A stretch of 63,494 nt of DNA, filler included, from Octopus bimaculoides (taxonomy: Eukaryota), in the NCBI RefSeq assembly GCF_001194135.2. It is 7 parts of 7 records of this genome, joined end to end, with 100 filler letters (N's around TTAATTAATTAA, not from the genome) between each part and the next. Parts side by side here need not be neighbours in the genome. Positions count along the whole stretch, not along the records: positions 1 to 24,356 come from NC_068990.1; 6 more parts are not named here. One strand, written 5' to 3'. Within the stretch, counting starts at the first letter, position 1; every line of letters starts with the position of its first letter. The notes under the pieces are model-generated. The model was not told the DNA's origin. It made no database searches and was given only the letters and a program-made list of their open reading frames with translations. Of this stretch, positions 130 to 45,160 are shown piece after piece. A program made the translations under genes and the position numbers.

Positions 130-325
130 CCATGATAATCATTTCTGCTATAGGTGCAAGGTCTGAAATTTGGGGGAGGAGGCTAACCGATTACATCAAT
201 CTCAGTACTTGACTGGTACCTAATTTTTCGACTTCGGAATGATGCAAGGCGAAGTCAAACTCAGGACGTAAACACAGATGAACCGCCACTAAGCATTTTG
301 CTCGGCATGCTAACGGTTCTGTTTT
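130..325 (-). mobile_element. tRNA-derived SINE, family A (decayed copy)
   Basis: Reverse complement matches the family seen intact at 37870-38100: head CAGAAYCGTTAGCA..AAATGCTTAG, central TTTGCCTTTCATCCTTTCGGGGTCGA-like block, tail AAATTTCAG..CTATAGCAGAAA. Confidence 0.8.
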
Positions 326-351
326 ATTATTCACTATAATAATAATAATAA

Positions 352-420
352 TAAGAATCCTTTCTGCTATAGGCACAAGGCCTGAAATTTGAGGGAGGGG
401 ATAGTCGACTACATCTATAA
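352..420 (-). mobile_element. SINE family A, 3' tail fragment with (ATT)n tail
   Basis: Reverse complement reads CCCTCCCTCAAATTTCAGGCCTTGTGCCTATAGCAGAAAGGATTCTTATTATTATT. Confidence 0.8.
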
Positions 421-619
421 CAACCCTGTTAATTCGCTGCCTTACCTCTGTAAACGTCGATGACTGAAAACTAGTTCTCAATAGCGTAGCTGGGATGGAA
501 TGGTGGTAGTTCGACTCCGTTGACACCTTTGTGACTGCTATATAATCCTGTATAGGGTATGGGGGGACAGGGACAATAAATTCAAAGGATACCCCTGACA
601 GCACACACAAGCGATATCA

Positions 620-755
620 TATTGGTTTAAAATTTTAGCACACGGTTAGATGAATGGCAAAGTTGGCCTCGGCGGAATTTGAGATCAGAACGTAAAGACG
701 AACCAAATGTTGCTAAGCCTTTCGGCTGGCGTGCTAACGATTCTCCCAGTTCTCT
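620..755 (-). mobile_element. SINE family A, internally deleted copy
   Basis: Head and B-box region (CTCAAATTCCGCCGAGG) joined directly to a tail remnant. Confidence 0.7.
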
Positions 756-771
756 CCTTTGTAAAGCGATA

Positions 772-985
772 AAATATTGGTTTCAAATTTTGGCACAAGG
801 TCAGCAATTTCGGGGAGGAAGTTAGTCGATTCCTTCGACCCCTGTGTTCAACTGGTACTTGTTTTATCGACTCCGAAAGGATGAAAAGCAAAGTAGACCT
901 CGGCGGAATTTGAACTCAGAACATAAAGACAGACAAAATACCGCTAAGCATTTTTGTCCATCACGGTAACGATTCTACCAGCAAA
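772..985 (-). mobile_element. SINE family A, near full length
   Basis: Reverse complement contains GTTCTGAGTTCAAATTCCGCCGAGGTCTACTTTGCTTTTCATCCTTTCGGAGTCGATAAAACAAGTACCAGTTGAACAC. Confidence 0.85.
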
Positions 986-2060: not shown

Positions 2061-2383
2061 TAACCAAAAACAAACAGCAATAGCAAAGAACTGAAATATC
2101 AACTACAGCTAAAAGAAGCCAATGAGGGTATCTGTATATGGTCCCTTGATCCACTAGAAATAACAACCAAATTTTAGTAAAGTAAGAACGCATTGGACAA
2201 TGCAATCCGTGATAAACTCTGCCTAAAGTGAAAATGAAATGAGGTGACGGATGGCTGTAATAGATTGGAATGTAAGTCTGCCCTAGGGCTAAACAACAAT
2301 AAAAACGACGACAACAACAACAACAACAACAATGACTACAAAAATAAAAGAACAGCCACAATTACAAAGGTAAATGTAAATAG

Positions 2384-4474: not shown

Positions 4475-4521
<47 letters not shown>

Positions 4522-4602
4522 TTGTCTATCTATCTATTTGTCTATCTATCTCCCTGCCTGCTTACCTGCCTGTCTGTCTGTCTAGCCATTTATCTATCTA
4601 TA

Positions 4603-5215: not shown

Positions 5216-6256
5216 CAGGATGTTCGGGCTAAATTTGATGTTTTTTAATGTCGCCTTTTTTCAGTAACGGCTTGATCTATCGGTGAGCATTCATCGGCGT
5301 TGGGGAGCGTAAATATTAGAATTGAAGTTGTGAAGAAGTTAGCTAACATGGAGGACTGGAAGCCATCTGAATATTGGAAAAGAGTTACCTGTATTATGAG
5401 GATTCGCGCCCGGTATCAAAATGTCGACGTCATGACTGCTGCTCAATGGCCTGTGAACACTGGTAAAGGCTTAAGACGTGACAGCTCTGTAGCTACGAAA
5501 CCGTGGTTAGAGACTACGAAACTGTGGTTAGTAGGAAGGGAAACTGCAGGCACTCTGCCCGTGTCAGCACGCCAGAATTCATCCAGCAACTGCAGGACAA
5601 GGTAATGGAAGATCCAAGAAAGAGAATCCGGGGTTTGGTGAGAGAGATGGATACAAGAAGTGCAAGTGACAAATTCTGACAGCCAAGGCCAAGGAGAACC
5701 ACAGAGAACCACAAAGAAGCTCCTGGAGAAGCTGAGGCATCCTGTTGAGCCGGAGATGTTCTGGTTCTTCTCAGATGAAAAGAACTTCTGCCAGGACTAG
5801 CTGCGCAACACCCAGAACAGCAGATGGCTTGCCTACAATCCATGTGGTGACCCAGATATAAAAATCAAGTTTCCTCAAACTGTGATAGTCTTTGGGTGTG
5901 TCTCCAGTGAGGATGACGTCATGCCGCCCCACATCTTTGAGCATAGCCTTAGGCTCAGTTTAGACGGCTATGTGAAGTTGCTGGAGACTGTGTTCAAACC
6001 CTGGCTGGAGATGATTGCTGGAAAGGCCATATGTGTGCTAGCATGTTTCGGCTCCTTGCCATACCTTCTGAAAGAGTCAGAAGTGGTTATCGGAGAATTT
6101 CTACGACTTCATCAGCTCCAGTTTCTGGCCTCCTAATTCCCCTGATTGTAATTCCATGGATTAATCACCAACTACTCTGCTTGCAATACCAAGGCCAAGT
6201 TGCTGGCCAAGATCAAAGAGGTGTTCGAAGATCTTACTAGGGACACAGTGAGGAAC
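5216..6256 (+). mobile_element. maT/DD37D-type Tc1/mariner transposon, decayed transposase, right end lost in gap
   Basis: TA|CAGGATGTTCGGGCTAAATTTGA terminus. Translated motifs WFFSDEKNF, VFGCVSSEDDVMPPHIF, LETVFKPWL and FWPPNSPDCN, interrupted by stops and frameshifts. Confidence 0.85.
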
Positions 6257-6700: not shown

Positions 6701-7374
6701 CACGTGCACGCGCGTGCGTGCATGTATGTATGTATGTATGAGCATGTGTGTATGAGCGCGCGCATATGTATGAATACATGTATACGCACATATACACAGA
6801 CGCACATATATGTGTCCTTCTCTTTAGATATTCATCTTTATGTTACTATATTGTTTTCTATTGACACATTTTCCATCCAGTGATTAATCATTATAGATCT
6901 TTTCATGCTATATATGTCATGTCTCTTAGTTGCGTTGACGGAGACATGCGTGAAACTCTTAGTTGTGAGTGTGTATTTATGTATGTGTGAGAGAGGGAGA
7001 GAAAGAGAGAGAGAGGATGGAGGGAGTGAGATTGATTTTAGCCCAACAATAAACACTACTTTTGTATCAAGCGTATATATTCCCTCTTGTTTGTAATCTA
7101 AAACGTAGACGCACGTACTTATATTCACACATATACACACTAACTCGCGCACATACACAAGCTGCTTGAATGGAGTCCTTTAGATAACTATAACCGGCTG
7201 ATTCATGTTGGGGAAGGTATATAACAATACTCTGAGAACGTTTCGGACCCCACCCATTTTGATAACAATAACCGCTTGATAGTTTGATAACATTCTTCAT
7301 GATTTATATGTTGCCTTCACAAAATAAACGTGCGCGTGTCTGTGTGTGTGCCTAAATATGTATTTATGCATGTA

Positions 7375-7444
<70 letters not shown>

Positions 7445-7450
7445 CCTATC

Positions 7451-7989: not shown

Positions 7990-8043
<54 letters not shown>

Positions 8044-8329
8044 GCGTGTGTACTTGCCAGGCTTTCTCTTTCAATGTGTGCGTGTATGTATGTGAGTGTG
8101 TGTGTTTGTGTGTGTGTATGCGTGTGTGTCTGTTCGTAAACAAGCCACCGGTTAAAAGGAAGTAGTAATACGAAAAATTCGGCTGGTTAGTTTTATTTAT
8201 ACTAAACCTACCATATTTCGACAAACCTGTCATTCTTTATCTTATGTACACTCGCCACCCACACATACACAGAGCAATGCACACACACACACACATTCAT
8301 TTATCAACACACACATAAAACTCCCAATC

Positions 8330-10460: not shown

Positions 10461-10689
10461 TTCTGTCTCAGTGTTTGTTGTCTTAGTTTCTTTCTCTTTC
10501 ACACAGACACATTTATTTATCATATTAACTCCACAGAGATTCAATATATAATCGAAGTCGATAGTATTTGTTTCTATCTGAATTCGAATTCGATCAGAAT
10601 AGCTAAGTCTTTCATCCACACTCACTAAAACGAACACAACAAAATAAATACCATTCACTCACTGGTTTTGATTTAATCATCAGCAATTT

Positions 10690-10895
10690 TCTTTTCTACT
10701 ATAGGTACACAACCTGAAATTTTGTGGGGAGGGGGGAAGTCGATTACATCGACATCAGAGATCAACTGGGAGTTATTTATCGAACTCGAATGTATAAAAA
10801 AAAAGCCGACCTCGGCGGAATTTGAAATCACGACGCAGAGCCGGAAGAAATACTGCAAAGCAGTTGTGACCGGCGTGTTAACGATTCTGCCGGCT
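10690..10895 (-). mobile_element. SINE family A
   Basis: Reverse complement has CAGAATCGTTAACACGCCGG head, TTTCAAATTCCGCCGAGGTCGGC and tail AAAATTTCAGGTTGTGTACCTATAGTAGAAA. Confidence 0.85.
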
Positions 10896-11165
10896 CATTG
10901 ACGTTAAAAATCGTAATATTATTGTAATCTTTTCTCTGTGTATATATGTCTCGATTGCCAATTTAAAACATCATATTTATTTTCTCATATTACTTGTAGA
11001 ATGATTAATAGGGTTCTGCGTAGAAGCTAAATGTATCAGATGAGGAGAGAATGTGCGTGCTGGATAGTTAAGAAAGTTCGCTTTGTAACGATGTGGCTTT
11101 GGGTTCAATTCTATTACACGAGTGATACTTAGAATTTGGTAGCATGAAACTGTGCAGAAGTCAGT

Positions 11166-11227: not shown

Positions 11228-11451
11228 TTTGCTCCTTTTATTTGTTTCGGTCATTTGACTGTAGCCATGCTGGAGCACCAACTTTAGTCGAACAAATCAA
11301 CACCGAAACTTATTCTTTGTAAGCCTAGTACTTATTCTATCGGAGTCTTTTGCCAAACTGCTAAGTTACTGGGACGTAAACACACCAACATCAGTTGTCA
11401 AGCGATGGTGGGGGACAAACACAGACACACAAACACACACACATATATACA

Positions 11452-11494
<43 letters not shown>

Positions 11495-11645
11495 TATACG
11501 ACGGGATTCTTTCAGTTTCTGTCTTCCAAATCCACTCACAAGGCTTTGGTCGGTCCGAGGGTATAGCAGAAGACACTTGCCCAAGGTGCCACGCAATGGG
11601 ACTGAACCCAGAACCATGTGGCTGGTTAGCAGGCTACTTACCACA
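11228..11645 (-). mobile_element. tRNA-derived SINE family B with internal (TA)/(CA) microsatellite
   Basis: Collinear with the + strand copy at 41995-42415: GGTTCAGTCCCA B-box region, GGCACCTTGGGCAAGTGTCTTC, tail GGTGCTCCAGCATGGCTACAGTCAAATGACCGAAAC. Confidence 0.9.
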
Positions 11646-11663
11646 CACCCACTCATATATATA

Positions 11664-11699
<36 letters not shown>

Positions 11700-14005
11700 A
11701 TGTATGTGTGTGTGTATGTGTGTGTGCGTGTGTGCGTGCGCGTACGTATATCCGTGTATGTATGTATGTATATCATGTTTGTTCTGTATCGAGTTGCAAA
11801 TGCTACTTTTTCAGTATCACCGTTATAACAAAAGAAGTGAATCACTATTTTCCCTGTTTAGAAGAATGTGACCAACAACGCTATTGTTCATCGGTTGCAA
11901 TATAAAATAAAATAAAATTAAAATATATTCGCTTCTAACTCTCAATTTGGATTGTACTCTTTGTTCGAAATGTCTCAGGTTCAACTGTATGCTGCAATGT
12001 GAATAGGCCATAAGTTATATGCAAGAGACTAGGGTCACATCCAGAAGGAAATATGTCTCCCATCTTTTTAACACCATTAGCTCAGATAAAGGAAGGCAGG
12101 AGCAAGTAGAGACCAAGTGTGTTGCCTCTTTCTCTTTTTAGGTATATTATTATAGTTGTTATAATATCATCATAAATATTATATATGTTGTTGTGTCATT
12201 CTCTTTTAGTGTTTTATTATTTAGCACACTCACCGGCAAAGTTTCTACTCATTTACTTTTTTTTTTTCTCAAAATTTTCGTTGCGTCTGTAATTCATAGC
12301 CCCTCACAAACCAAATCCAAAAACAAAGTATTATATATGTATTATACGATAATTATAAATCATTATATAATGCATATATAATACTATATGCATTATGTTA
12401 TATTTTTTCCGTGGGGTTGGGCAGCTGTAAGCTCAAGGAGCGTTCCTGATGGCTAAATCTATAGCTCCCTGCATTAAACGCTGAAAATCGTGCGAGAAAT
12501 TAATCCAGATTTCGGGTGGTTTATATCAAGATTGTGAGGGGTTATGAATTAAAGAAAGCTGTGAAGGGGCATAAATTATGTAAATATACATTTTCTGACG
12601 CGCAAAACATGGAAATATCGGGTGTTTTAAAATTAAATATAGATAAATAGTTTTTAAAATTAAGTAGTTAAATGACTGGAAAGTGTCCGGTAATTTCTAA
12701 TGATGCCGACAATGTCTAGTAACGTCCAATGATGACAACAAGCAGTAACTGATAAGAAAAGAAGGAAAAAGAAAACGTTACAGTTTCGTCAAGTTTTCCG
12801 GCCAACGCGAAATAGTTCTAAATGAAGTCAATATGATAAAAATCAGATAAATTAGAAAGGAAAATGAGGAATGAAGACTAAATCTACATGGTATATCTCC
12901 CATATTTGATTGCATATATCCCGAATATGTATTAACGCAAATGGACATCTAACCCCGCCCAAAGTTACAAGCATTTTTGATGAGAAACTGAAGTATCCTT
13001 CAAGCTAATGTTTATCCTGCACTGCTAACAAGAGTTAACTTCCGGTACTCAGACATCAACACAGCCACATAATCTTGAAATGTTATTTACTCACTACGCC
13101 CATCATCATCTTCACCACCACCATCCTTCTTGTGAGGGCTATAAAATCAGTGTCAGTTCTCTCCCGTCAAATTTGTGCCGAGAGCGGAAGATCGGAGAAA
13201 CTATTATTAATAGAATCAATAGTGCGTCGGACAAAATTACTTCGGCTCATTATGTTCTGCGTTAAAAACCCGCTGAAGTTAACTTTAACATTCATCCTTT
13301 CGGGATCGTTAAAGTAAAGCTCGAGACAAGTATAGGGGTTGATATATAATCAACTAACCCGTCCCTAACACATTTTGAGACTATGTGACAATGCAAGAAA
13401 TAATTTTGTTATTGTTGTTGTTGTTGTATCAGTAGTCCTTTTCTTATTGCCAGCTTCTTGTGTCTGGATAGCTTTTGTACATGGCGAGAGCTCTGTTTCA
13501 TGTTATGCTTTTTACGTTGCATTTTTCAATGGTTAAGTCACAGGATGAGGGGCAGCATCCACTCCCCTATTTAGGGGCTCTGCGATTGATGGGTTGAAGG
13601 AATGAACTTATTCTCAGACCAGAGAACTGGCCCCCAAATGCTTACAATGGACTAGACTAAGGTTAGAGGCAGTCAAGGGTCAGGTGGTGACGATTAAATC
13701 TACAATCAATTGGACTTTCACACAAATTCTATTTTCCAAATTTCACGCACTGGGCTTTTGTGGATCGGAAGCTTATGGTAGTGGGATAAAACGCGAACCC
13801 ATGTACTTATGTAGTGAGCTTCTTGAGAGTAATCTTATAGAAATGTATGTATATAGTCTCGAGTAGTGGTAGATTTTTTGTACGTTGTGTATGTATATGT
13901 ACAACCTTAGACTTGTGTCAGTACTGGAGTTTGGGTTATATTGCTATCCCTAGGGTTTCTAAACACATTATTATTATTGTTGTTGTTGTTGTTGTTGTTG
14001 TTATT

Positions 14006-14238
14006 GCGAGCTGGCAGAACTGTTAGCACGCCGGGCAAAATGCTTAGCGGTATTTTGTTTGTCTTTACGTTTTGAGTTCAAATTTCGCCGAGGTCGACTT
14101 TGCCTTTCATCCTTTCGGGGTCGATAAATTAAGCAGCAGTTACGCACCGGGGTCGATGTAATCGACTTAATACCTTTGTCTGTCCTTGTTTGTCCCCTCT
14201 ATGTTTAGCCCCTTGTGGGCAATAAAGAAATAAGAAAT
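14006..14238 (+). mobile_element. SINE family A with Tx1-like 3' tail
   Basis: Full head and body, then TTGTCCCCTCTATGTTTAGCCCCTTGTGGGCAATAAAGAAAT. Confidence 0.9.
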
Positions 14239-14415
14239 GTTAGCACGCCGGGGAAATGCTTAGTGGTATTTCGTCTGTCTTTATGTTCTGAGTTCAAATT
14301 CTGCCTAGGTCGACTTTGCCTTTCATACTTTCAAACAGTTGCGTGCTGGGGTCGATCTAATCGACTGGCCCCCTCCCCAAAAATTTCGGGCCTTGTGCCT
14401 AGAGTAGAAAAGAAT
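14239..14415 (+). mobile_element. SINE family A, 5'-truncated, directly tandem to the previous copy, alternative tail
   Basis: Begins GTTAGCACGCCGGGGAAATGCTTAG and ends AAATTTCGGGCCTTGTGCCTAGAGTAGAAAAG. Confidence 0.9.
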
Positions 14416-14589
14416 ATCAAAACAAACACAGGTATAATAATAATCATTATTATATTTGTATATCAATCACATTAGATAAATCCAGTGATGGAAAAGTGAT
14501 GTTTCAAATCAATCCAAAAATGTTTCTACGCTTGTTCGTTTGGTGATGTATTCAAAGCGTTTTCATTGCCTCCTCTCGCAAAAAAACTT

Positions 14590-18432: not shown

Positions 18433-19544
18433 NNNNNNNNNNNNNNNNNNNNNNNNNNNNNNNNNNNNNNNNNNNNNNNNNNNNNNNNNNNNNNNNNNNN
18501 NNNNNNNNNNNNNNNNNNNNNNNNNNNNNNNNNNNNNNNNNNNNNNNNNNNNNNNNNNNNNNNNNNNNNNNNNNNNNNNNNNNNNNNNNNNNNNNNNNNN
18601 NNNNNNNNNNNNNNNNNNNNNNNNNNNNNNNNNNNNNNNNNNNNNNNNNNNNNNNNNNNNNNNNNNNNNNNNNNNNNNNNNNNNNNNNNNNNNNNNNNNN
18701 NNNNNNNNNNNNNNNNNNNNNNNNNNNNNNNNNNNNNNNNNNNNNNNNNNNNNNNNNNNNNNNNNNNNNNNNNNNNNNNNNNNNNNNNNNNNNNNNNNNN
18801 NNNNNNNNNNNNNNNNNNNNNNNNNNNNNNNNNNNNNNNNNNNNNNNNNNNNNNNNNNNNNNNNNNNNNNNNNNNNNNNNNNNNNNNNNNNNNNNNNNNN
18901 NNNNNNNNNNNNNNNNNNNNNNNNNNNNNNNNNNNNNNNNNNNNNNNNNNNNNNNNNNNNNNNNNNNNNNNNNNNNNNNNNNNNNNNNNNNNNNNNNNNN
19001 NNNNNNNNNNNNNNNNNNNNNNNNNNNNNNNNNNNNNNNNNNNNNNNNNNNNNNNNNNNNNNNNNNNNNNNNNNNNNNNNNNNNNNNNNNNNNNNNNNNN
19101 NNNNNNNNNNNNNNNNNNNNNNNNNNNNNNNNNNNNNNNNNNNNNNNNNNNNNNNNNNNNNNNNNNNNNNNNNNNNNNNNNNNNNNNNNNNNNNNNNNNN
19201 NNNNNNNNNNNNNNNNNNNNNNNNNNNNNNNNNNNNNNNNNNNNNNNNNNNNNNNNNNNNNNNNNNNNNNNNNNNNNNNNNNNNNNNNNNNNNNNNNNNN
19301 NNNNNNNNNNNNNNNNNNNNNNNNNNNNNNNNNNNNNNNNNNNNNNNNNNNNNNNNNNNNNNNNNNNNNNNNNNNNNNNNNNNNNNNNNNNNNNNNNNNN
19401 NCTTCGTCCCTTGATACCCTAAGCTCGTGCTTATTTTGTTTAATGGTTAATCCAGCGCTGTATGTATGTATGTATGTATGTATGTATGTATGTATGTATG
19501 TATGTATGTATGTATGCATTCATGCATGTATGTATGTGACTGTA

Positions 19545-20879
19545 TTAGGTCGTCAAGTATGAAATTTGTAGAAAAGAAAAAAGTTTGCTAATGTTTTATA
19601 AATACAAGGACTAGTTTTATTCATCAAAGCATGCACCCATATTGTCAATACACTTTTGTNNNNNNNNNNNNNNNNNNNNNNNNNNNNNNNNNNNNNNNNN
19701 NNNNNNNNNNNNNNNNNNNNNNNNNNNNNNNNNNNNNNNNNNNNNNNNNNNNNNNNNNNAGCATCGTCGGAATTAAATTTTTTTTCTTATCAAAAAGTTA
19801 TCCAAATTCTGGAAGAAGTGGTAGTCAGTGGGGGCAAGTTAAGGAGAGTATGGTGGATGATGGAGAACTTCCAACTCTAACTTCTGTTGTTTCACCAATG
19901 TCATTTTTGCGATGTATGTGGTCTGGCGTTGTCTTGCAATAAAATAGGAGTGGATCTGTTGACTAATCTAGGCTGTCTTTTTGTAAGTTTCTGCATCATT
20001 TGGTCCAGTTGGCTGTAGTATACTTTGGCCGTGATTGATGAGCCAGGTTTAATGAAATCATAATGGATCACACCTGCGCTAGACCACCAAACACTCACCA
20101 TCAGCTTCTTTTGATGAATTTTGCTTGTCTTTGTCTAACCATTGTGCTGAACGTTTACGGTTGTTGCATCGGATCCATTTCTCATCACATGTTACAATTC
20201 GATTCAAAAATAATTCATCTTTGTGACGAGAAAGTAGCATAATGCAGGCTTCCAAACGTTGTTGTTTCTGATTTTCATTGAGTTCATGTGGAACCCACTT
20301 ATCCAACTTTTTCACTTTACCGATTTNNNNNNNNNNGTTCATGTGGAACCCACTTATCCAACTTTTTCACTTTACCGATTTGAACTAGGTGAGTCAATAT
20401 TGTTTGCTTGCTAACACCAAACAACAACAATAATCACGGGCACTTTGAGAAGGATCTGACTCGACAGTGGCTTTCAGTTCGTCATTATCCACCTTTGTTT
20501 CTGGTCGACCGCTTGCTCATTTGTGAGGTCAAAGTTACCAGAACGAAATTTTGCAAACCAATTTGATACTGTCTGCTGTGTAATAATAGTAAAATGAAAT
20601 ACTCCATTAATATTCCGAGCTGTTTGTGATGCAGTATTTCCAAGAAAGAACTCATATTTCAAAACTGTATGAGTTTCCGACTTATCCATCTCTAAACAAA
20701 AATAGCAAAAAACAATTTGTAAATACTTTATAAAGCGCAAAATGAGTGAGGATAAAGAAATAGATGTGTCAGCTTTCTAACAAAAAGTAAAGATTGTCAA
20801 AATATAATAATGGCGCATAATGAGCAGCTGTCAAAGTTTACCATATACCTTACTACAAATTTCATACTTGACAACCTAA
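19545..20879 (-). mobile_element. Mariner transposon with both TIRs and TA target duplication; transposase decayed
   Basis: TIRs TTAGGTCGTCAAGTATGAAATTTGTAG and TTAGGTTGTCAAGTATGAAATTTGTAG (26/27 identical). Motifs WVPHEL, IVTCDEKW, MVSVWWS and LLQDNARPH, with stops and deletions. Confidence 0.95.
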
Positions 20880-21383: not shown

Positions 21384-21679
21384 CGAACAGCTGTATGTAT
21401 GTATGTATGTATGTATGTATGTATGTATGTATGTATGTATGTATGTATGAATGAATGAATGTGCAGATTTGTATGTTTTATGTACGTATTCTCATGCATA
21501 TAGTTGCATATCTAGACATGTTCATATATATTTAAATGATAAACTTCTGGAAAGTTTCACAGATTCTTACAGTTCCAGTGATGGATTGGATTTGTAGTCT
21601 TCGAATTAGCTTTTTCCTTTTTGGTTTTAAGAAGTCTAATTTCTCAAGATTGGTATTTAGGCAGTGTGTTGCATATCCC

Positions 21680-21710
<31 letters not shown>

Positions 21711-21799
21711 TGTATGTATGTATGTATGTATGTATGTATGTATGTATGTACGGTACGGTACGTACATATGTATGTATGTGCGTACGGTACGTATGTATG

Positions 21800-26814: not shown

Positions 26815-29800
26815 ATTTCATTTTTTGGCCACTAGGGCCGACATATAGGGGACAATACAGTAGACATGGACGGAAACACCGAGTACACAATTGAAACATT
26901 AACAATAATATCCTACAAAAAGAATTTAACAATAGAGGTGAGGGGTGTAACCTCCTGGATTTGATTCAGTTACCCCATTATTCCTGAACAACTTGACATT
27001 TCGAGGGCATCCTGGAAGAGCGCCCTTCTCCCACTCAAATTCACTTGCCTTATTAGAGTAGGTCCACTCATACGGGCCATTTTCGCTACATTCACCCACC
27101 TTTTAGCAGATATACTGGGAGGCAGTACTTCTCTCTCCTTCCCCATCTTCCTTTCCAAGTGTAATTTGAAAAATTTGATGTGGGATTGACCAAAAAGAAA
27201 TGTCTGTCTTCAGTCCTTTTAACCTGGTCCACCATACAACCTCTTTTGCTACAGCTGTCAGACAGAGGAAACTTGCCTGCCCTTTCGGACCGATGGAAGG
27301 TGGCGGATCGATCTTCACTATGGACTCGGCCGATAGCCGGATCCGTCCTTCATGTGATATCAGCTGTTCAACATAAATCTACAAGTCAATAATGCAACGC
27401 GATTGGACGAGTGTGTGCAGAACGGTTTCGTCGCTCTGCGCGCATCTCGGGCACGTCCGTCTGACAGCACTTCTATGCCTGTAGAGTTTATCTCCAGCCG
27501 GCAGTGCCCCCCCCCCCCCNNNNNNNNNNCACTGCCAAGTAGGGATTTCTGGAAGTTATCCATCGTTCCCGGCTCGAAAATCCTCCTGAACAGATCGGTC
27601 AGTTTGACTTCGTCAATGCCTAGCGTCTCGACAAGTGCGTCATCGCTCTTTCCCTCTAGTAACCCTCTAAAGAACGGAAGAGTGGATGTTCCACTGATCG
27701 AAATGCCTGACTGGTAGAGGGCAGTGAGTGCCTCGAAACATTCCAGATGCCAGTCACCCTGCCTCGGTCTCTTCTTGACCCAGGACTGCAGTTGAGTCAG
27801 GGAGACCAGCTGTGGGTAGGCTTGTTTGATAAACGGCGATCACACCTGTTCACCGGTTATGCAGAATATTTGGAGATGCCGCATCCTTAGCGCATGTCTG
27901 CGTATCATTAGTCACGGCATGCCCAGCCCACAGCGTAGAGGGTGTTGGCAGCAGACACAGCGCCTCACCAGTGGAACCTGTATCCTCCACAAGAATTTGA
28001 AGAGGAGGCGCTCCAGCTTGGCGAACCGCGATTGTGGTCAAGGCACGACTGTCAAGCGGTAGTACATGATGGACGTGATGTACACATTCGCCACCACCGC
28101 CCGACCTCTCATCCCATTATTGGGTGAAACTGGCTACCCTTCTCGTCACCTCGTCCCAATACTTATCCACCTGGAGGACTGGTCCGAACCAAACCCCAAG
28201 CAACTTTACTAGTTCGTCCGTCCAGCGCCCAACAATGCTGTTGGACGGCATGCACTTACCTCTCCAGGTACCGAGTTGCCACCCCAGCGGGTTCTCCGGG
28301 TTAACCTTTGCTCCTGACAACTTTTCATATTCCTCCGATGATGTGCCGACCACCTCGATTTCTGAGGTGTCAGACATCATCACGGTGATGTCATTCGCAT
28401 ACGCCGACACAGACATTTTGCATCCAGGTTCGACTCTTGAGCCTTTATTGCAGCAGCTCTAGTTTCTGCAGTAAAGGCTCAAGTGTGAATACGTACAGAG
28501 GGGAGGAGAGAGGGCACCCTTAACTGACCGATCGGGAAATCTGAAACGGTTCCGAAAGCTGGCCATTAACTTTGACCACCGAGGAGATGCCGCTGTGCGT
28601 TGCAGCGATCCAACCTCTGAATACGGGGACAAAGCTAGTTGCTTTGAGGACAACGTCTAGATATTGATGGTCGCCCCTATCGAATGCTTTCGATTGATCT
28701 AAATTGATCAGCGTCCCACCGGAGCCAGGTTTTACACCCTACCCTGTCTATAATGTATTGCATGAGGTGGAGGTTGTCGTGTATGGACCTAGTCGGGATT
28801 TCGTAAGTTTGCGCCTCCAAAACCTAATCCGAATTGTGGTTTTATTAACACGCTGCGTCTCCGCCACGCGGGCCCATCGAGCAGCTTTGATCCCCTCGTT
28901 TCTTAGAGCACGCACCTTAGCTCTGACAATGCAACCTTCATATTTCGCATTGAAGAACTGGTCTAATGCCATTCTCGCTGCTAGCACGTCGGTTGCAATG
29001 CTACTACAAATAGCCTCGTCTAATTTAGCTACTAACCCCTCCTCCTTTCTATTTATTCTAACGCTATTTGTTTGATAAACCCTATAGATATTACTCTACT
29101 CTCTTTTGAGAGTCGCTCACAACTTGTTGTTGACGATCCCCACCTTTCAACCTCTGCTTGACTAAATTACTGACCCGGTCCCTGTAAGCCTGACGTGCCG
29201 GAAACGACATGTTCAACGTCCAGTATCCGGGTCCTAACCTACGAGCCTTATCTAGGTTGACCGTACAGATCACAGACTTATAGTCTGAATAGGCTACCGT
29301 TTTAAAAAGTGGACATCCTACACTATTATTATGTATTTTCCTAGTGAAAAAATCCTATTTGTATACGATCTAGATGACCCTAAGCGGTTTGTCCAGGGCC
29401 ACACTGGCGCATTAGGGAAATCTAGTCGGTATCTGTCAGGAATTTGGAACTGTCTGATCCAGTGCTTGAGGCTTTTGCACTCCACCTCTGCTATCAACTA
29501 CTCAGACACAACCCCAGCGTTGATTTAAGGTTCCGTTCCAGTCCCCTACTAACAGTAAAGCGCGAGACGTACCTCGAAAGGCTTCCAGACGCCTAAAGAA
29601 ATCCGGCCGTTTGGCTCCGGTAGGAGCGTAGGCAGCAACCAGTCTACAGACACTACCTTCACTATTGCTCACGTCCAGGACTACCAATTTCCCGTTCGGG
29701 TCCCTGAAGATCAACTTGAGGTAGATCCAGTTCTTTCCTGAACACTGCTGTCACTCCATCTCCGGCCGACTAATAGATGCAAAGATCTGATAGTCGTCGA

Positions 29801-37869: not shown

Positions 37870-38100
37870 GCTGGCGAGCTGGCAGAAACGTTAGCGCGCC
37901 GGGCGAAATGCTTAGCGGTAATTTCGTCTGCCGCTACGTTCTGAGTTCAAATTCCGCCGAGGTCGACTTTGCCTTTCATCCTTTCGGGGTCGATTAAATA
38001 AGTACCAGTTACGCACTGGCATCGATGTAATCGACTTCATCCGTTTGCCTGTCCTTGCTTGTCCCCTCTGTGTGTATTTCCTTGTGGGTAGTAAAGAAAT
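37870..38100 (+). mobile_element. SINE family A with Tx1-like tail, young copy
   Basis: Intact head GGCGAGCTGGCAGAAACGTTAGC, B box GAGTTCAAATTC, tail TTGTCCCCTCTGTGTG..CCTTGTGGGTAGTAAAGAAAT. Confidence 0.92.
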
Positions 38101-44780: not shown

Positions 44781-45160
44781 TTGTCTAGTGAATGCTTCAA
44801 AAAAAGATGGGTGAATGTAGCAAGGATGGCACGTGTAAATGACGGAGCCACCTTGAGCATAACACTATAAAAGAGTAAAAAAAAATCCAGACAAAAAACA
44901 AAAAGGCAAAAGAGAGTCACTTACTGTTATAGTTTCTGTAATGACAATATTGGCCAAGGCTACCGTGGTCTTTTCCGTAGGCTTTTCTTTCCACGGCTAA
45001 ACCTAAATTATCCTCCCCTCTTTTTACACGAGAACATTACTGTGTGTTACACGATCCATATTGATCGCTTTTTTTTTTTTCTCGGTCCCTTTTGATCGAC
45101 ACACCCCTACATTGTATCTATCCCATCTTTGTTGAGCCCTGTGTGGCTAATAAAAGAAAT
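44781..45160 (+). mobile_element. Tx1-type LINE 3' end (ORF2 tail plus 3' UTR) ending in (ATCT)n
   Basis: LSSECFKKRWVNVARMARVNDGATLSITL* then a UTR ending GAGCCCTGTGTGGCTAATAAAAGAAAT followed by (ATCT)n. Confidence 0.88.

What the first reader, a model, noticed from the sequence alone, without database searches (positions are those of the whole stretch)
14190..14231. SINE family A carries the 3' end of the Tx1 LINE present in the same window
SINE tail TTGTCCCCTCTATGTTTAGCCCCTTGTGGGCAATAAAGAAAT aligns by hand at 34 of 43 columns with the Tx1 terminus TTGTCCCCTATATGTCGGCCCTAGTGGCCAAAAAATGAAAT (reverse complement of 26815-26855). It is similarly close to the second Tx1 end at 45120-45160, and the SINE at 38070-38100 has the same tail. 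Established: SINEs often share a 3' tail with a partner LINE whose RT recognises it, best known for L2, CR1 and RTE partners; L1-clade elements usually need only poly(A). Inference: a stringent SINE/Tx1 partnership, which could explain the SINE's (ATT)-rich insertion context.
Basis: partly seen in the sequence, partly recalled or inferred. Interest (0 to 1): 0.75.

Follow-up and report, generated by a model that had tools for sequence, protein, structure and literature searches.

The report
Octopus SINE tail, LINE partner unseen
The flagged 42 bases are the real 3' end of a short mobile element (SINE) of an octopus genome and look like a tail borrowed from a longer element (LINE), but that LINE is not in this piece, so the claim that it is a Tx1 element could not be tested.

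Summary
Window 14190-14231 is the last 42 nt of a 64-nt 3' module (14168-14231) of a 226-nt SINE copy (14006-14231). The same module, with the same ...AAAGAAAT end, occurs on SINE copies in Octopus vulgaris and O. bimaculoides. One of those copies has an 11-nt target-site duplication. A related "A2" tail marks an insertion that is absent at the same site in two sister species, so the module travels with retroposition.

It is one of several 3' modules (A, A2, B, C) on one shared head and body. All carry a 4-bp hairpin with a CTTGT loop, kept through compensatory changes.

But the piece holds no LINE: no reverse transcriptase or endonuclease, only a mariner. About 164 kb of fetched Octopus DNA showed no LINE carrying this tail either. 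"Tx1" is therefore untested.

The (ATT)-rich context is real. (ATT)n arrays follow the 3' ends of B/C-type copies, including 5'-truncated ones, so I read them as tail extensions, not a Tx1 target.

Verdict: an ordinary SINE with a LINE-like tail. It is a plausible but unproven new SINE/LINE pair, of modest interest.

The parts
13967..14005 (+). (ATT)4(GTT)8ATT microsatellite that directly abuts the 5' end of the SINE copy.
   Evidence: Read directly. The same kind of array precedes the A-type copy in L014. It also follows B/C-type 3' ends elsewhere.
14006..14167 (+). SINE-A head and body, shared with all other copies. It ends in AATCGACT and lacks the first 4 nt of the full 5' end GGCGGCGAGCTGG.
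   Evidence: blastn against a consensus-like reference: positions 5-166, 92.6% identity. MAFFT alignment A1. The full 5' end is taken from L015, L014 and L009 copies.
14074..14089 (+). B-box-like motif GAGTTCAAATTTCGCC (compare GGTTCGANNCC), a putative Pol III internal promoter element.
   Evidence: Sequence inspection only. ARAGORN and Rfam find no tRNA, so a tRNA origin is not shown here.
14168..14231 (+). A-type 3' module (64 nt): TAATACCTTTGTCTGTCCTTGTTTGTCCCCTCTATGTTTAGCCCCTTGTGGGCAATAAAGAAAT.
   Evidence: Unique in the piece. 86-89% identical in O. vulgaris L009 24118-24183. Also in O. bimaculoides L015 40606-40652 and in metagenome scaffold L014. It aligns to tail B as B plus a 19-nt insert.
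14208..14220 (+). Putative 4-bp hairpin GCCC[CTTGT]GGGC inside the tail.
   Evidence: Pattern scan. Pair counts on 10 tails: 87.5% of cells paired against 63.8% in shuffles, covariation 0.656 against 0.216, 0 of 500 shuffles as high, slid controls 17-52%. Energy-based folding does not single it out.
14221..14231 (+). A-rich terminus AATAAAGAAAT, which includes an AATAAA hexamer. This is the end point common to A-type copies.
   Evidence: Copies end ...GAAAT, followed by different flanks or a short A/T-rich extension: AAGAAAT, AAATAA, AAATATA, CGG.
14232..14415 (+). Second SINE copy, B-type and 5'-truncated (from about position 10-15), joined head-to-tail to the A copy. Its tail is CCCCCTCCCCAAAAATTTCGGGCCTTGTGCCTAGAGTAGAAAAGAAT.
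   Evidence: blastn. Tail HMM hit at 14370-14415, E 1e-12 to 2e-12. Head-to-tail pairs are common in this superfamily.
133..982 (-). Cluster of four further SINE copies or fragments on the minus strand with B- or C-type tails: 133-328, 356-415 followed by (ATT)5, 649-752, 774-982.
10686..10896 (-). Further B-type SINE copy, used for comparison.

Best explanation
The flagged bases are the 3' terminal module of a non-coding SINE of about 230 nt in an Octopus genome.

Shown:
- One conserved head and body carries at least four alternative 3' modules: A, A2, B and C.
- All modules share the same plan: a C-rich stretch, a 4-bp hairpin with a CTTGT loop, then an A-rich end.
- A-type copies end at the same ...AAAGAAAT in different species and loci.
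- One A-type copy has an 11-nt target-site duplication.
- An A2-type insertion is present in O. bimaculoides and absent at the same site in O. vulgaris and O. sinensis.

Inferred: the module is the part of the SINE RNA that the reverse transcriptase of a partner LINE recognises to start target-primed reverse transcription ('stringent' 3'-end recognition), and it was copied from the 3' end of that LINE. New modules would arise when a SINE picks up the end of a related LINE subfamily.

Whether that LINE is Tx1-clade is not shown: no LINE with this tail could be reached.
For: - Modular anatomy: alignment A1.
- A-type copies elsewhere: L009 24118-24259, 90.8% over 142 nt; L015 40606-40897 with TSD TATAAGGCCTA; L014 173-398.
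- A2 insertion L011 7436-7555 lies in (TATC)n with a TATCTATC duplication. The site is empty in L009 and L012.
- Hairpin covariation. Hairpin variants are GCCC/GGGC (A), AGGC/GCCT (B), AGCC/GGCT (A2) and GGCC/GGCC (quoted LINE end).
- Pairwise tail scores: A, A2 and the quoted LINE end form one group (z 6.5-11). B and C form another (z 6-8.5). Between the groups z is 2.8-4.8.
- Quoted LINE end against tail A: 34 of 43 columns, z 8.3 global and 15 local.
- Two other LINE-like 3' ends found in Octopus loci do not match tail A (z -0.5 and 1.4).
- Stem-loops with compensatory changes are the known mark of stringent-type LINE and SINE tails (PMC3747384).
Against: - No LINE carrying this or a B/C-like tail was seen in the piece or in about 164 kb of Octopus DNA.
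- The hairpin has just 4 bp. Folding energies do not differ from shuffles (z -0.7 to -1.3), and the minimum-energy fold of tails A and B picks other pairings.
- The covariation rests on about three or four independent tail lineages, and the structure was derived from these same sequences.
- Tail A can also be read as tail B plus a 19-nt insert and drift.
Confidence: 0.6

Rival explanations
1. The partner is a Tx1-clade (L1-group) LINE that recognises this tail stringently, and its target specificity explains the (ATT)-rich surroundings of the SINE.
For: - The quoted LINE end matches tail A well above chance.
- Octopus genomes hold recently active L1-Tx1 families: 13 families and 421 insertions in O. 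vulgaris (PMC13282606).
- Tx1-clade elements are known to mobilise SINEs (SINEU with Tx1-Mar). Some target microsatellites, such as Kibi and Koshi (PMC4494074).
- Duplications of 8-11 nt and A/T-rich terminal extensions suit an APE-type, L1-like enzyme. This last point is an inference.
- Two A-type copies sit just after (ATT)n(GTT)n arrays.
Against: - The clade of the LINE was assigned without tools and cannot be checked here.
- Five A-like insertions lie in five different contexts: a SINE head, the inside of a SINE, a SINE body, unique DNA and (TATC)n. That is not strict site specificity.
- (ATT)n arrays follow the 3' ends of B/C-type copies even when the copy is 5'-truncated and its upstream flank is unrelated. 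This points to a tail extension, not a target.
Confidence: 0.3
2. The tail is LINE-derived, but the partner belongs to another clade present in Octopus (CR1, L2, Dong-R4 or similar), and the reader misclassified the LINE.
For: - A hairpin followed by a short repeat at the 3' end is the classical layout of L2 and CR1-type stringent tails. Most catalogued SINE/LINE pairs belong to such clades, and none of the 58 pairs in the 2012-2013 survey is Tx1 (PMC3747384).
- B/C-type tails end in (ATT)n microsatellites.
- Dong-R4 and CR1 are among the most active LINE groups in O. vulgaris.
Against: - No match to the Rfam UnaL2 3' element even at E up to 10.
- Duplications of 8-11 nt are longer than I recall for CR1 insertions (from memory, not tested here).
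- Two non-matching LINE-like 3' ends were seen, ending in (GATA)n and (ATGT)n, but their clades are not established.
Confidence: 0.25
3. There is no LINE origin. Tail A is a subfamily variant of the superfamily's own tail (a 19-nt insertion plus substitutions). On this reading the 'LINE terminus' is either a SINE-A fragment lying next to the LINE or a tail the LINE picked up from the SINE.
For: MAFFT aligns tail A to tail B with one 19-nt gap. SINE copies very often lie against other repeats: 6 of 27 tails have a SINE body within 40 nt, against 0.6% at random positions. A SINE fragment next to a LINE end is therefore easy to get.
Against: - The quoted LINE end is 21% diverged from all four A copies. 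It has its own compensated hairpin (GGCC/GGCC) and a CTAGT loop.
This is unverifiable here.
- A, A2 and the quoted end are about equidistant from each other, as expected for sister lineages rather than for a recent SINE fragment.
Confidence: 0.13
4. The similarity between the SINE tail and the LINE end is chance.
For: The sequences are short (41-42 nt) and were picked by eye.
Against: Global z is 8.3, with no shuffle above 8 against an observed 23. Local z is 15. The tail is the best hit in the whole piece by a wide margin.
Confidence: 0.02

Closest known systems
UnaSINE1 / UnaL2 of the eel (stringent SINE/LINE pair, L2 clade; Kajikawa and Okada 2002, as reviewed in PMC3747384)
   Same: The SINE ends in a module shared with a LINE 3' end. 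The module has a small stem-loop followed by a short terminal repeat or A/T-rich end.
   Different: There is no match to the Rfam UnaL2 element. The partner clade is unknown here. Nothing has been tested experimentally. The hairpin is only 4 bp.
SINEU / Tx1-Mar of crocodilians (Kojima 2015, PMC4494074)
   Same: A SINE proposed to depend on a Tx1-clade LINE.
   Different: That pairing rests on a shared insertion target (Mariner-N4_AMi) and on snRNA-derived heads, and those SINEs end in poly(A). The argument here is a shared 3' tail, and no single target is seen.
L1-clade stringent pairs: a maize/sorghum L1 lineage and the maize and sorghum SINEs, and Chlamydomonas SINEX-3_CR / L1-1_CR (Ohshima 2012-2013, PMC3472496 and PMC3747384)
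   Same: The partner LINE is within the L1 group. There is a conserved 3' hairpin with compensatory changes, and SINE and LINE share the tail.
   Different: Those are in plants and algae, end in poly(A), and the LINEs were sequenced and classified. Here the LINE is unseen.
'Jigsaw' SINEs of gastropods and bivalves (Matetovici et al. 2016, PMC4758252)
   Same: Mollusc SINEs built from exchangeable head, body and tail modules shared between families.
   Different: Different classes of molluscs and different domains. This octopus family was not matched to a named domain here.

Membership tests
SINE (short interspersed element) | Short, non-coding, many dispersed copies | tested here: met
   51 blastn body hits in 164 kb of Octopus DNA, at least 8 of them in the piece. 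No Pfam domain in any frame.
SINE (short interspersed element) | Head derived from a small Pol III RNA (tRNA, 7SL or 5S) with internal A and B boxes | tested here: inconclusive
   ARAGORN finds no tRNA. Rfam finds no tRNA match even at E up to 10 on 14000-14430. A B-box-like GAGTTCAAATTYCGCC is present by eye. The literature classes octopus SINEs as tRNA-Deu or tRNA-Core (PMC8967140).
SINE (short interspersed element) | Insertion by retroposition: target-site duplications and empty orthologous sites | tested here: met
   L015 A-type copy is flanked by TATAAGGCCTA. L011 A2 copy is flanked by TATCTATC, and the site is empty in O. vulgaris and O. sinensis. No clear duplication was found for the window copy itself.
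Stringent-type SINE/LINE pair (shared 3' tail) | The SINE 3' tail is homologous to the 3' end of a LINE in the same genome | tested here: inconclusive
That LINE is outside the piece. No LINE with this tail turned up in 164 kb.
Stringent-type SINE/LINE pair (shared 3' tail) | Conserved stem-loop in the tail, supported by compensatory changes | tested here: inconclusive
   Covariation counts favour a 4-bp stem. There are few independent lineages, the structure was derived from the same sequences, and folding energy does not differ from shuffles.
Tx1 clade of LINEs (as partner) | ORF2 with an APE-type endonuclease and a reverse transcriptase that groups with Tx1 in phylogeny | not testable with these tools
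   No LINE coding sequence in the piece.
Tx1 clade of LINEs (as partner) | Preference for a specific target sequence, shared by LINE and SINE | tested here: not met
   Five A-like insertions have five different 3' flanks: AAGAAATGTTAGC, CGGTATTTCG, TATAAGGCCTA, a B-type SINE body, and TATCTATC. The only shared tendency is to lie next to other SINE copies, and that holds for all tail types. Many but not all Tx1 elements are target-specific (PMC4494074), so this lowers the claim without excluding it.
L2 / UnaL2-type tail | Match to the UnaL2 3' element model (Rfam) | tested here: not met
   No hit at E up to 1 on the piece or at E up to 10 on 14000-14430.

The most novel reading that the evidence does not exclude
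The octopus-specific SINE expansion is driven by a Tx1-clade (L1-group) LINE lineage that recognises a small 3' hairpin stringently, and SINE subfamilies arise by repeatedly swapping in the 3' ends of successive LINE subfamilies (modules A, A2, B, C). As far as my literature searches show, this would be the first SINE/Tx1 pair defined by a shared tail, and an animal case of stringent recognition inside the L1 group.
Probability: 0.3. Interest if true: 0.55.

Novelty: new member of a known kind. Interest (0 to 1): 0.3.

Why it matters
SINEs make up about a tenth of octopus genomes, and their expansion is octopus-specific (PMC13282606, PMC8967140). Knowing which LINE drives them would tell which enzyme shaped these genomes. 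If the partner is a Tx1 element using a hairpin-bearing tail, it would add an animal example of stringent 3'-end recognition in the L1 group, where poly(A) recognition is usually assumed. It would also give a simple, mutable RNA element (a 4-bp stem with a CTTGT loop) for retrotransposition assays. As it stands, the piece shows an ordinary SINE with a LINE-like, modular tail.

Tried and rejected
**Searches of public sequence and text**
- Tail pattern in JGI metagenome contigs: 8 chance hits of bacterial composition, no octopus DNA.
- SINE core pattern in GTDB genomes and IMG/VR: one unrelated rumen MAG, and nothing.
- SINE and tail sequence strings searched as words in full-text papers: nothing.

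**Protein routes to Octopus DNA**
- Homology search with a sense-strand SINE ORF: no hit.
- Homology search with the window's mariner fragment: only distant non-octopus hits.
- That search also returned P0041, whose contig is a distant cephalopod without this SINE.
- HMMER against all cluster representatives with the antisense SINE ORF gave 31 SINE-containing proteins. Most sit on short Logan contigs. Two were not on record. Two gave long O. bimaculoides loci.
- None of these loci holds a LINE with an A-, B- or C-like tail.

**Tests on the sequence itself**
- ARAGORN and Rfam on the SINE: no tRNA and no UnaL2 element.
- Energy-based folding of the tails: no better than shuffles.
- Pfam on two LINE C-terminal-like ORFs from L009 and L018: no family, so their clade stays unassigned.

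**Ideas dropped**
- That A plus B at 14006-14415 is a fixed dimeric SINE. The junction falls at different SINE positions in the window, L009 and L014.
- That (ATT)n is the insertion target. The arrays follow 3' ends of 5'-truncated copies whose upstream flanks are unrelated.

Full report
**What the piece is**

Places 1-24356 are AT-rich draft eukaryotic sequence with seven N gaps and many microsatellites. There are no clean long ORFs, no tRNA gene and only low-complexity chance hits in Rfam. The repeats identify it as Octopus or a close relative. Its SINE copies are 83-97% identical to copies on O. vulgaris chromosome OX597836.1 and O. bimaculoides chromosomes CM046623.1, CM046612.1 and CM046609.1.

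**The observation**

It is the end of a SINE copy at 14006-14231.
- The head and body (14006-14167, ending AATCGACT) are shared with copies at 133-328, 649-752, 774-982 and 10686-10896 on the minus strand. They are also shared with a second copy that follows directly at 14232-14415.
- Only the copy at 14006 carries this tail.
- The other copies carry a 'B' tail (CCCCCTCCCCAAAAATTTCRGGCCTTGTGCCTAKAGTAGAAAAGAAT) or a 'C' variant.
- The A-specific module is 64 nt (14168-14231), longer than the 42 nt flagged.

**The quoted LINE end**

- The two strings align at 34 of 43 columns, as claimed. The global score is 23 against -9.7 +/- 3.9 in 5000 shuffles (z 8.3). The local z is 15.
- When the piece is scanned with that string, the SINE tail is the best hit by far.
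- The piece itself holds no LINE. Pfam on every open segment of at least 45 aa that passed my filters for X and low complexity found only a mariner transposase (Transposase_1 at 19904-20134, HTH_48 at 20477-20776).
The SINE tail and the arithmetic are right, but 'the Tx1 LINE in the same window' cannot be seen.

**Related sequence from elsewhere**

DNA pattern scans of metagenomes, prokaryote genomes and viral contigs gave no octopus DNA. Two protein routes did.
- A rhodopsin query led to the orthologous loci L009 (O. vulgaris), L011 (O. bimaculoides) and L012 (O. sinensis).
- The long antisense ORF that runs through the SINE (window:14004-14198:-) was scored against all cluster representatives. 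It found 31 SINE-containing proteins and, through them, L015 (76 kb), L018 (36 kb) and some short contigs.
- With the piece, this makes about 164 kb of non-N Octopus DNA.

**What these loci show about tail A**

- L009 24118-24259 (minus strand) is a 5'-truncated SINE with tail A. It is 90.8% identical to the window copy over 142 nt and ends at the same ...AAAGAAAT.
- L015 40606-40897 (minus strand) is a full-length A copy flanked by an 11-nt duplication, TATAAGGCCTA. Its tail runs ...AATAAAGAAATAAATAA.
- L014, a metagenome scaffold of octopus origin, holds another full-length A copy.
- The window copy is close to the consensus of these four in its last 42 nt, so the match to the quoted LINE end also holds at consensus level.
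- L011 7436-7555 is a 5'-truncated SINE whose B-like C-rich stretch is followed by a different but related end ('A2'): TTTGTCCCAGCTTTGTTGAGCCCTGTGTGGCTAATAAAAGAAAT. It sits in a (TATC)n array with a TATCTATC duplication.
- That A2 element is absent at the orthologous site in O. vulgaris and O. sinensis. Modules of this type have therefore supported retroposition since those species split.

**Relation between the tails**

MAFFT aligns tail A to tail B as B plus a 19-nt insert and substitutions. The CCTTGTG core, the TTT before it and the AGAAA after it are conserved.

All tail types have a 4-bp inverted repeat around a CTTGT loop, and the arms differ in a compensated way:

| Tail | 5' arm / 3' arm |
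|---|---|
| A | GCCC / GGGC |
| B | AGGC / GCCT |
| A2 | AGCC / GGCT |
| Quoted LINE end (CTAGT loop) | GGCC / GGCC |

- On ten tails, 87.5% of cells pair, against 63.8% in shuffles. All four pairs show changes on both sides. The covariation score is 0.656 against 0.216 (0 of 500 shuffles as high). Sliding the 3' partners drops pairing to 17-52%.
- Caveats: the stem is short, there are only three or four independent lineages, I derived the structure from these same sequences, and minimum-energy folding does not favour it over shuffles.
- In pairwise scores, A, A2 and the quoted LINE end form one group (z 6.5-11). B and C form another (z 6-8.5). The link between the groups is weak (z 2.8-4.8).
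- The quoted LINE end is about as far from A as A2 is. That is what one expects if the three are sister 3' ends of related source elements.

**Mechanism**

The best-supported reading is the classical one (Ohshima and Okada; reviewed in PMC3747384). The SINE RNA borrows the 3' end of a LINE, and the LINE's reverse transcriptase recognises that end, hairpin included, to prime on a nicked target.
- Shown: the modular anatomy, the fixed terminus, the duplications, the empty site, and the compensated hairpin.
- Inferred: the recognition step and the direction of transfer (LINE to SINE).
- Not shown: that a LINE with this end exists, and its clade.

In 164 kb I saw two LINE ORF2 C-terminal-like fragments with their 3' ends. 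One is at L009 23248-23592 and ends in (GATA)n. The other is at L018 3880-4589 (minus strand) and ends in (ATGT)n. Neither resembles tail A (z -0.5 and 1.4), and Pfam does not classify them. No A-, B- or C-like tail was found attached to anything other than the SINE body.

**Tx1 or not**

For Tx1:
- Octopus has recently active L1-Tx1 families.
- Tx1 elements are known to mobilise SINEs and sometimes target microsatellites.
- The 8-11-nt duplications and A/T-rich terminal extensions suit an L1-like endonuclease. This is an inference.

Against or neutral:
- The clade was assigned by eye.
- The five A-like insertions have five different targets.
- Hairpin-plus-repeat tails are typical of L2 and CR1 partners, although the UnaL2 model does not match.

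I put Tx1 at about 0.3.

**The (ATT) context**

- (ATT)n or mixed (ATT)n(GTT)n arrays directly follow the 3' ends of B/C-type copies at window 356, L009 7482, L011 3891 and L018 35398.
- This includes 5'-truncated copies whose upstream flank is unrelated. The arrays therefore behave as 3' extensions of those tails.
- A-type copies in the window and in L014 lie just downstream of such arrays, but the L015 and L009 copies do not.

**Head-to-tail pairs**

SINE copies of this superfamily lie head-to-tail far more often than chance. Six of 27 tail ends have a same-strand SINE body within 40 nt, against 0.6% of random positions. This explains the A/B junction at 14231/14232. The junction falls at different SINE positions in the window, L009 and L014, so A plus B is not a fixed dimer. 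At the window junction, the tail end AAGAAAT is repeated by the first bases of the B head. That fits priming through microhomology, which is an inference.

**Comparison and novelty**

Shared SINE/LINE tails with hairpins are textbook. L1-group examples exist in plants and algae (PMC3472496, PMC3747384). A Tx1-SINE link exists through shared targets (PMC4494074). None of the 58 pairs in the 2012-2013 survey is Tx1, and my literature searches found no octopus SINE/LINE tail pair.

The feature is a new member of a known kind. If the Tx1 partner is confirmed it would be a modest new variant. Interest: 0.3.

Noticed in passing
window 14231/14232; window 777-752 and 356-321; L009 24119/24117; L015 66212/66207 and 4425/4431: SINE copies of this superfamily lie head-to-tail far more often than chance. 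Six of 27 tail ends have a same-strand SINE body starting within 40 nt, against 0.6% of random positions. Several junctions fall in the SINE head near GGCAGAAT, which resembles the tail ends AGAAT and GAAAT. This suggests insertion guided by microhomology.
   Followed up: partly
window 335-355; L009 7483 onward; L011 3865-3890; L018 below 35398: (ATT)n or mixed (ATT)n(GTT)n arrays directly follow the 3' ends of B/C-type SINE copies, including 5'-truncated ones. They look like 3' tail extensions that seed microsatellites.
   Followed up: partly
L011 7436-7555 compared with L009 about 7150-7330 and L012 about 6900-7090: A 120-nt 5'-truncated SINE with an A-like 'A2' tail is inserted in a (TATC)n array in O. 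bimaculoides, with a TATCTATC duplication. The orthologous site is empty in O. vulgaris and O. sinensis, so this is a lineage-specific insertion.
   Followed up: yes
window 19904-20776 (minus strand): Degraded mariner-type DNA transposon, with Pfam Transposase_1 (E 2.5e-20) and the Mos1 HTH_48 domain (E 1.9e-12). It is interrupted by a 10-N gap.
   Followed up: partly
window about 11250-11660: A second, unrelated SINE-like repeat containing GGCACCTTGGGCAAGTGTCTTC (a CORE/Ceph-like CCTTGGG motif) with internal (CA)n/(TA)n runs. Related copies are in L009 about 19290-20620 and in L015. A different part of it resembles the body of the SINE studied here.
   Followed up: no
window 356 to about 625 (minus strand): An element of about 265 nt ends in a B-type tail plus (ATT)5 but has a different upstream body, with no other copy in 164 kb. 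It may be another SINE family or a LINE 3' end sharing tail B.
   Followed up: partly
L009 24000-24259 (minus strand): SINE segments lie in scrambled order: positions 84-225 with tail A, then 42-101, then AAAAGGCG, then 1-49, with overlapping ends. This could be nested insertions, template switching or a misassembly.
   Followed up: no
L009 23248-23592 (+); L018 3880-4589 (minus strand); window 4475-4550, 7375-7445, 7990-8045, 19459-19520, 21390-21450, 21681-21750: Two LINE ORF2 C-terminal-like fragments end in (GATA)n and (ATGT)n. The same two microsatellites, (TATC)n and (TATG)n, are the commonest tetranucleotide arrays in the window, so many may be LINE 3' ends.
   Followed up: partly
window 2275-2335: GTCTGCCCTAGGGCTAAACAACAATAAAAAC is followed by (GAC)2(AAC)7. 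It contains a palindromic GCCC-TA-GGGC and scores third in the scan with the quoted LINE end (14, against a background of 6.1 +/- 1.4). It may be a solitary LINE-type 3' end.
   Followed up: no
window 14053-14056: The A copy has TTTT where other copies read TTTCG. A run of four T would stop Pol III early, so this copy is probably not a source copy.
   Followed up: no
window 5276-6237 (+) and L009 18558-19052 (minus strand): Broken ORFs in these two regions share stretches that look alike by eye (VIVFGCVSSEDDVMPPHIF... and IMMFGVITSDDNVMPPFII...). They have no Pfam hit and may be an unclassified DNA transposon.
   Followed up: no
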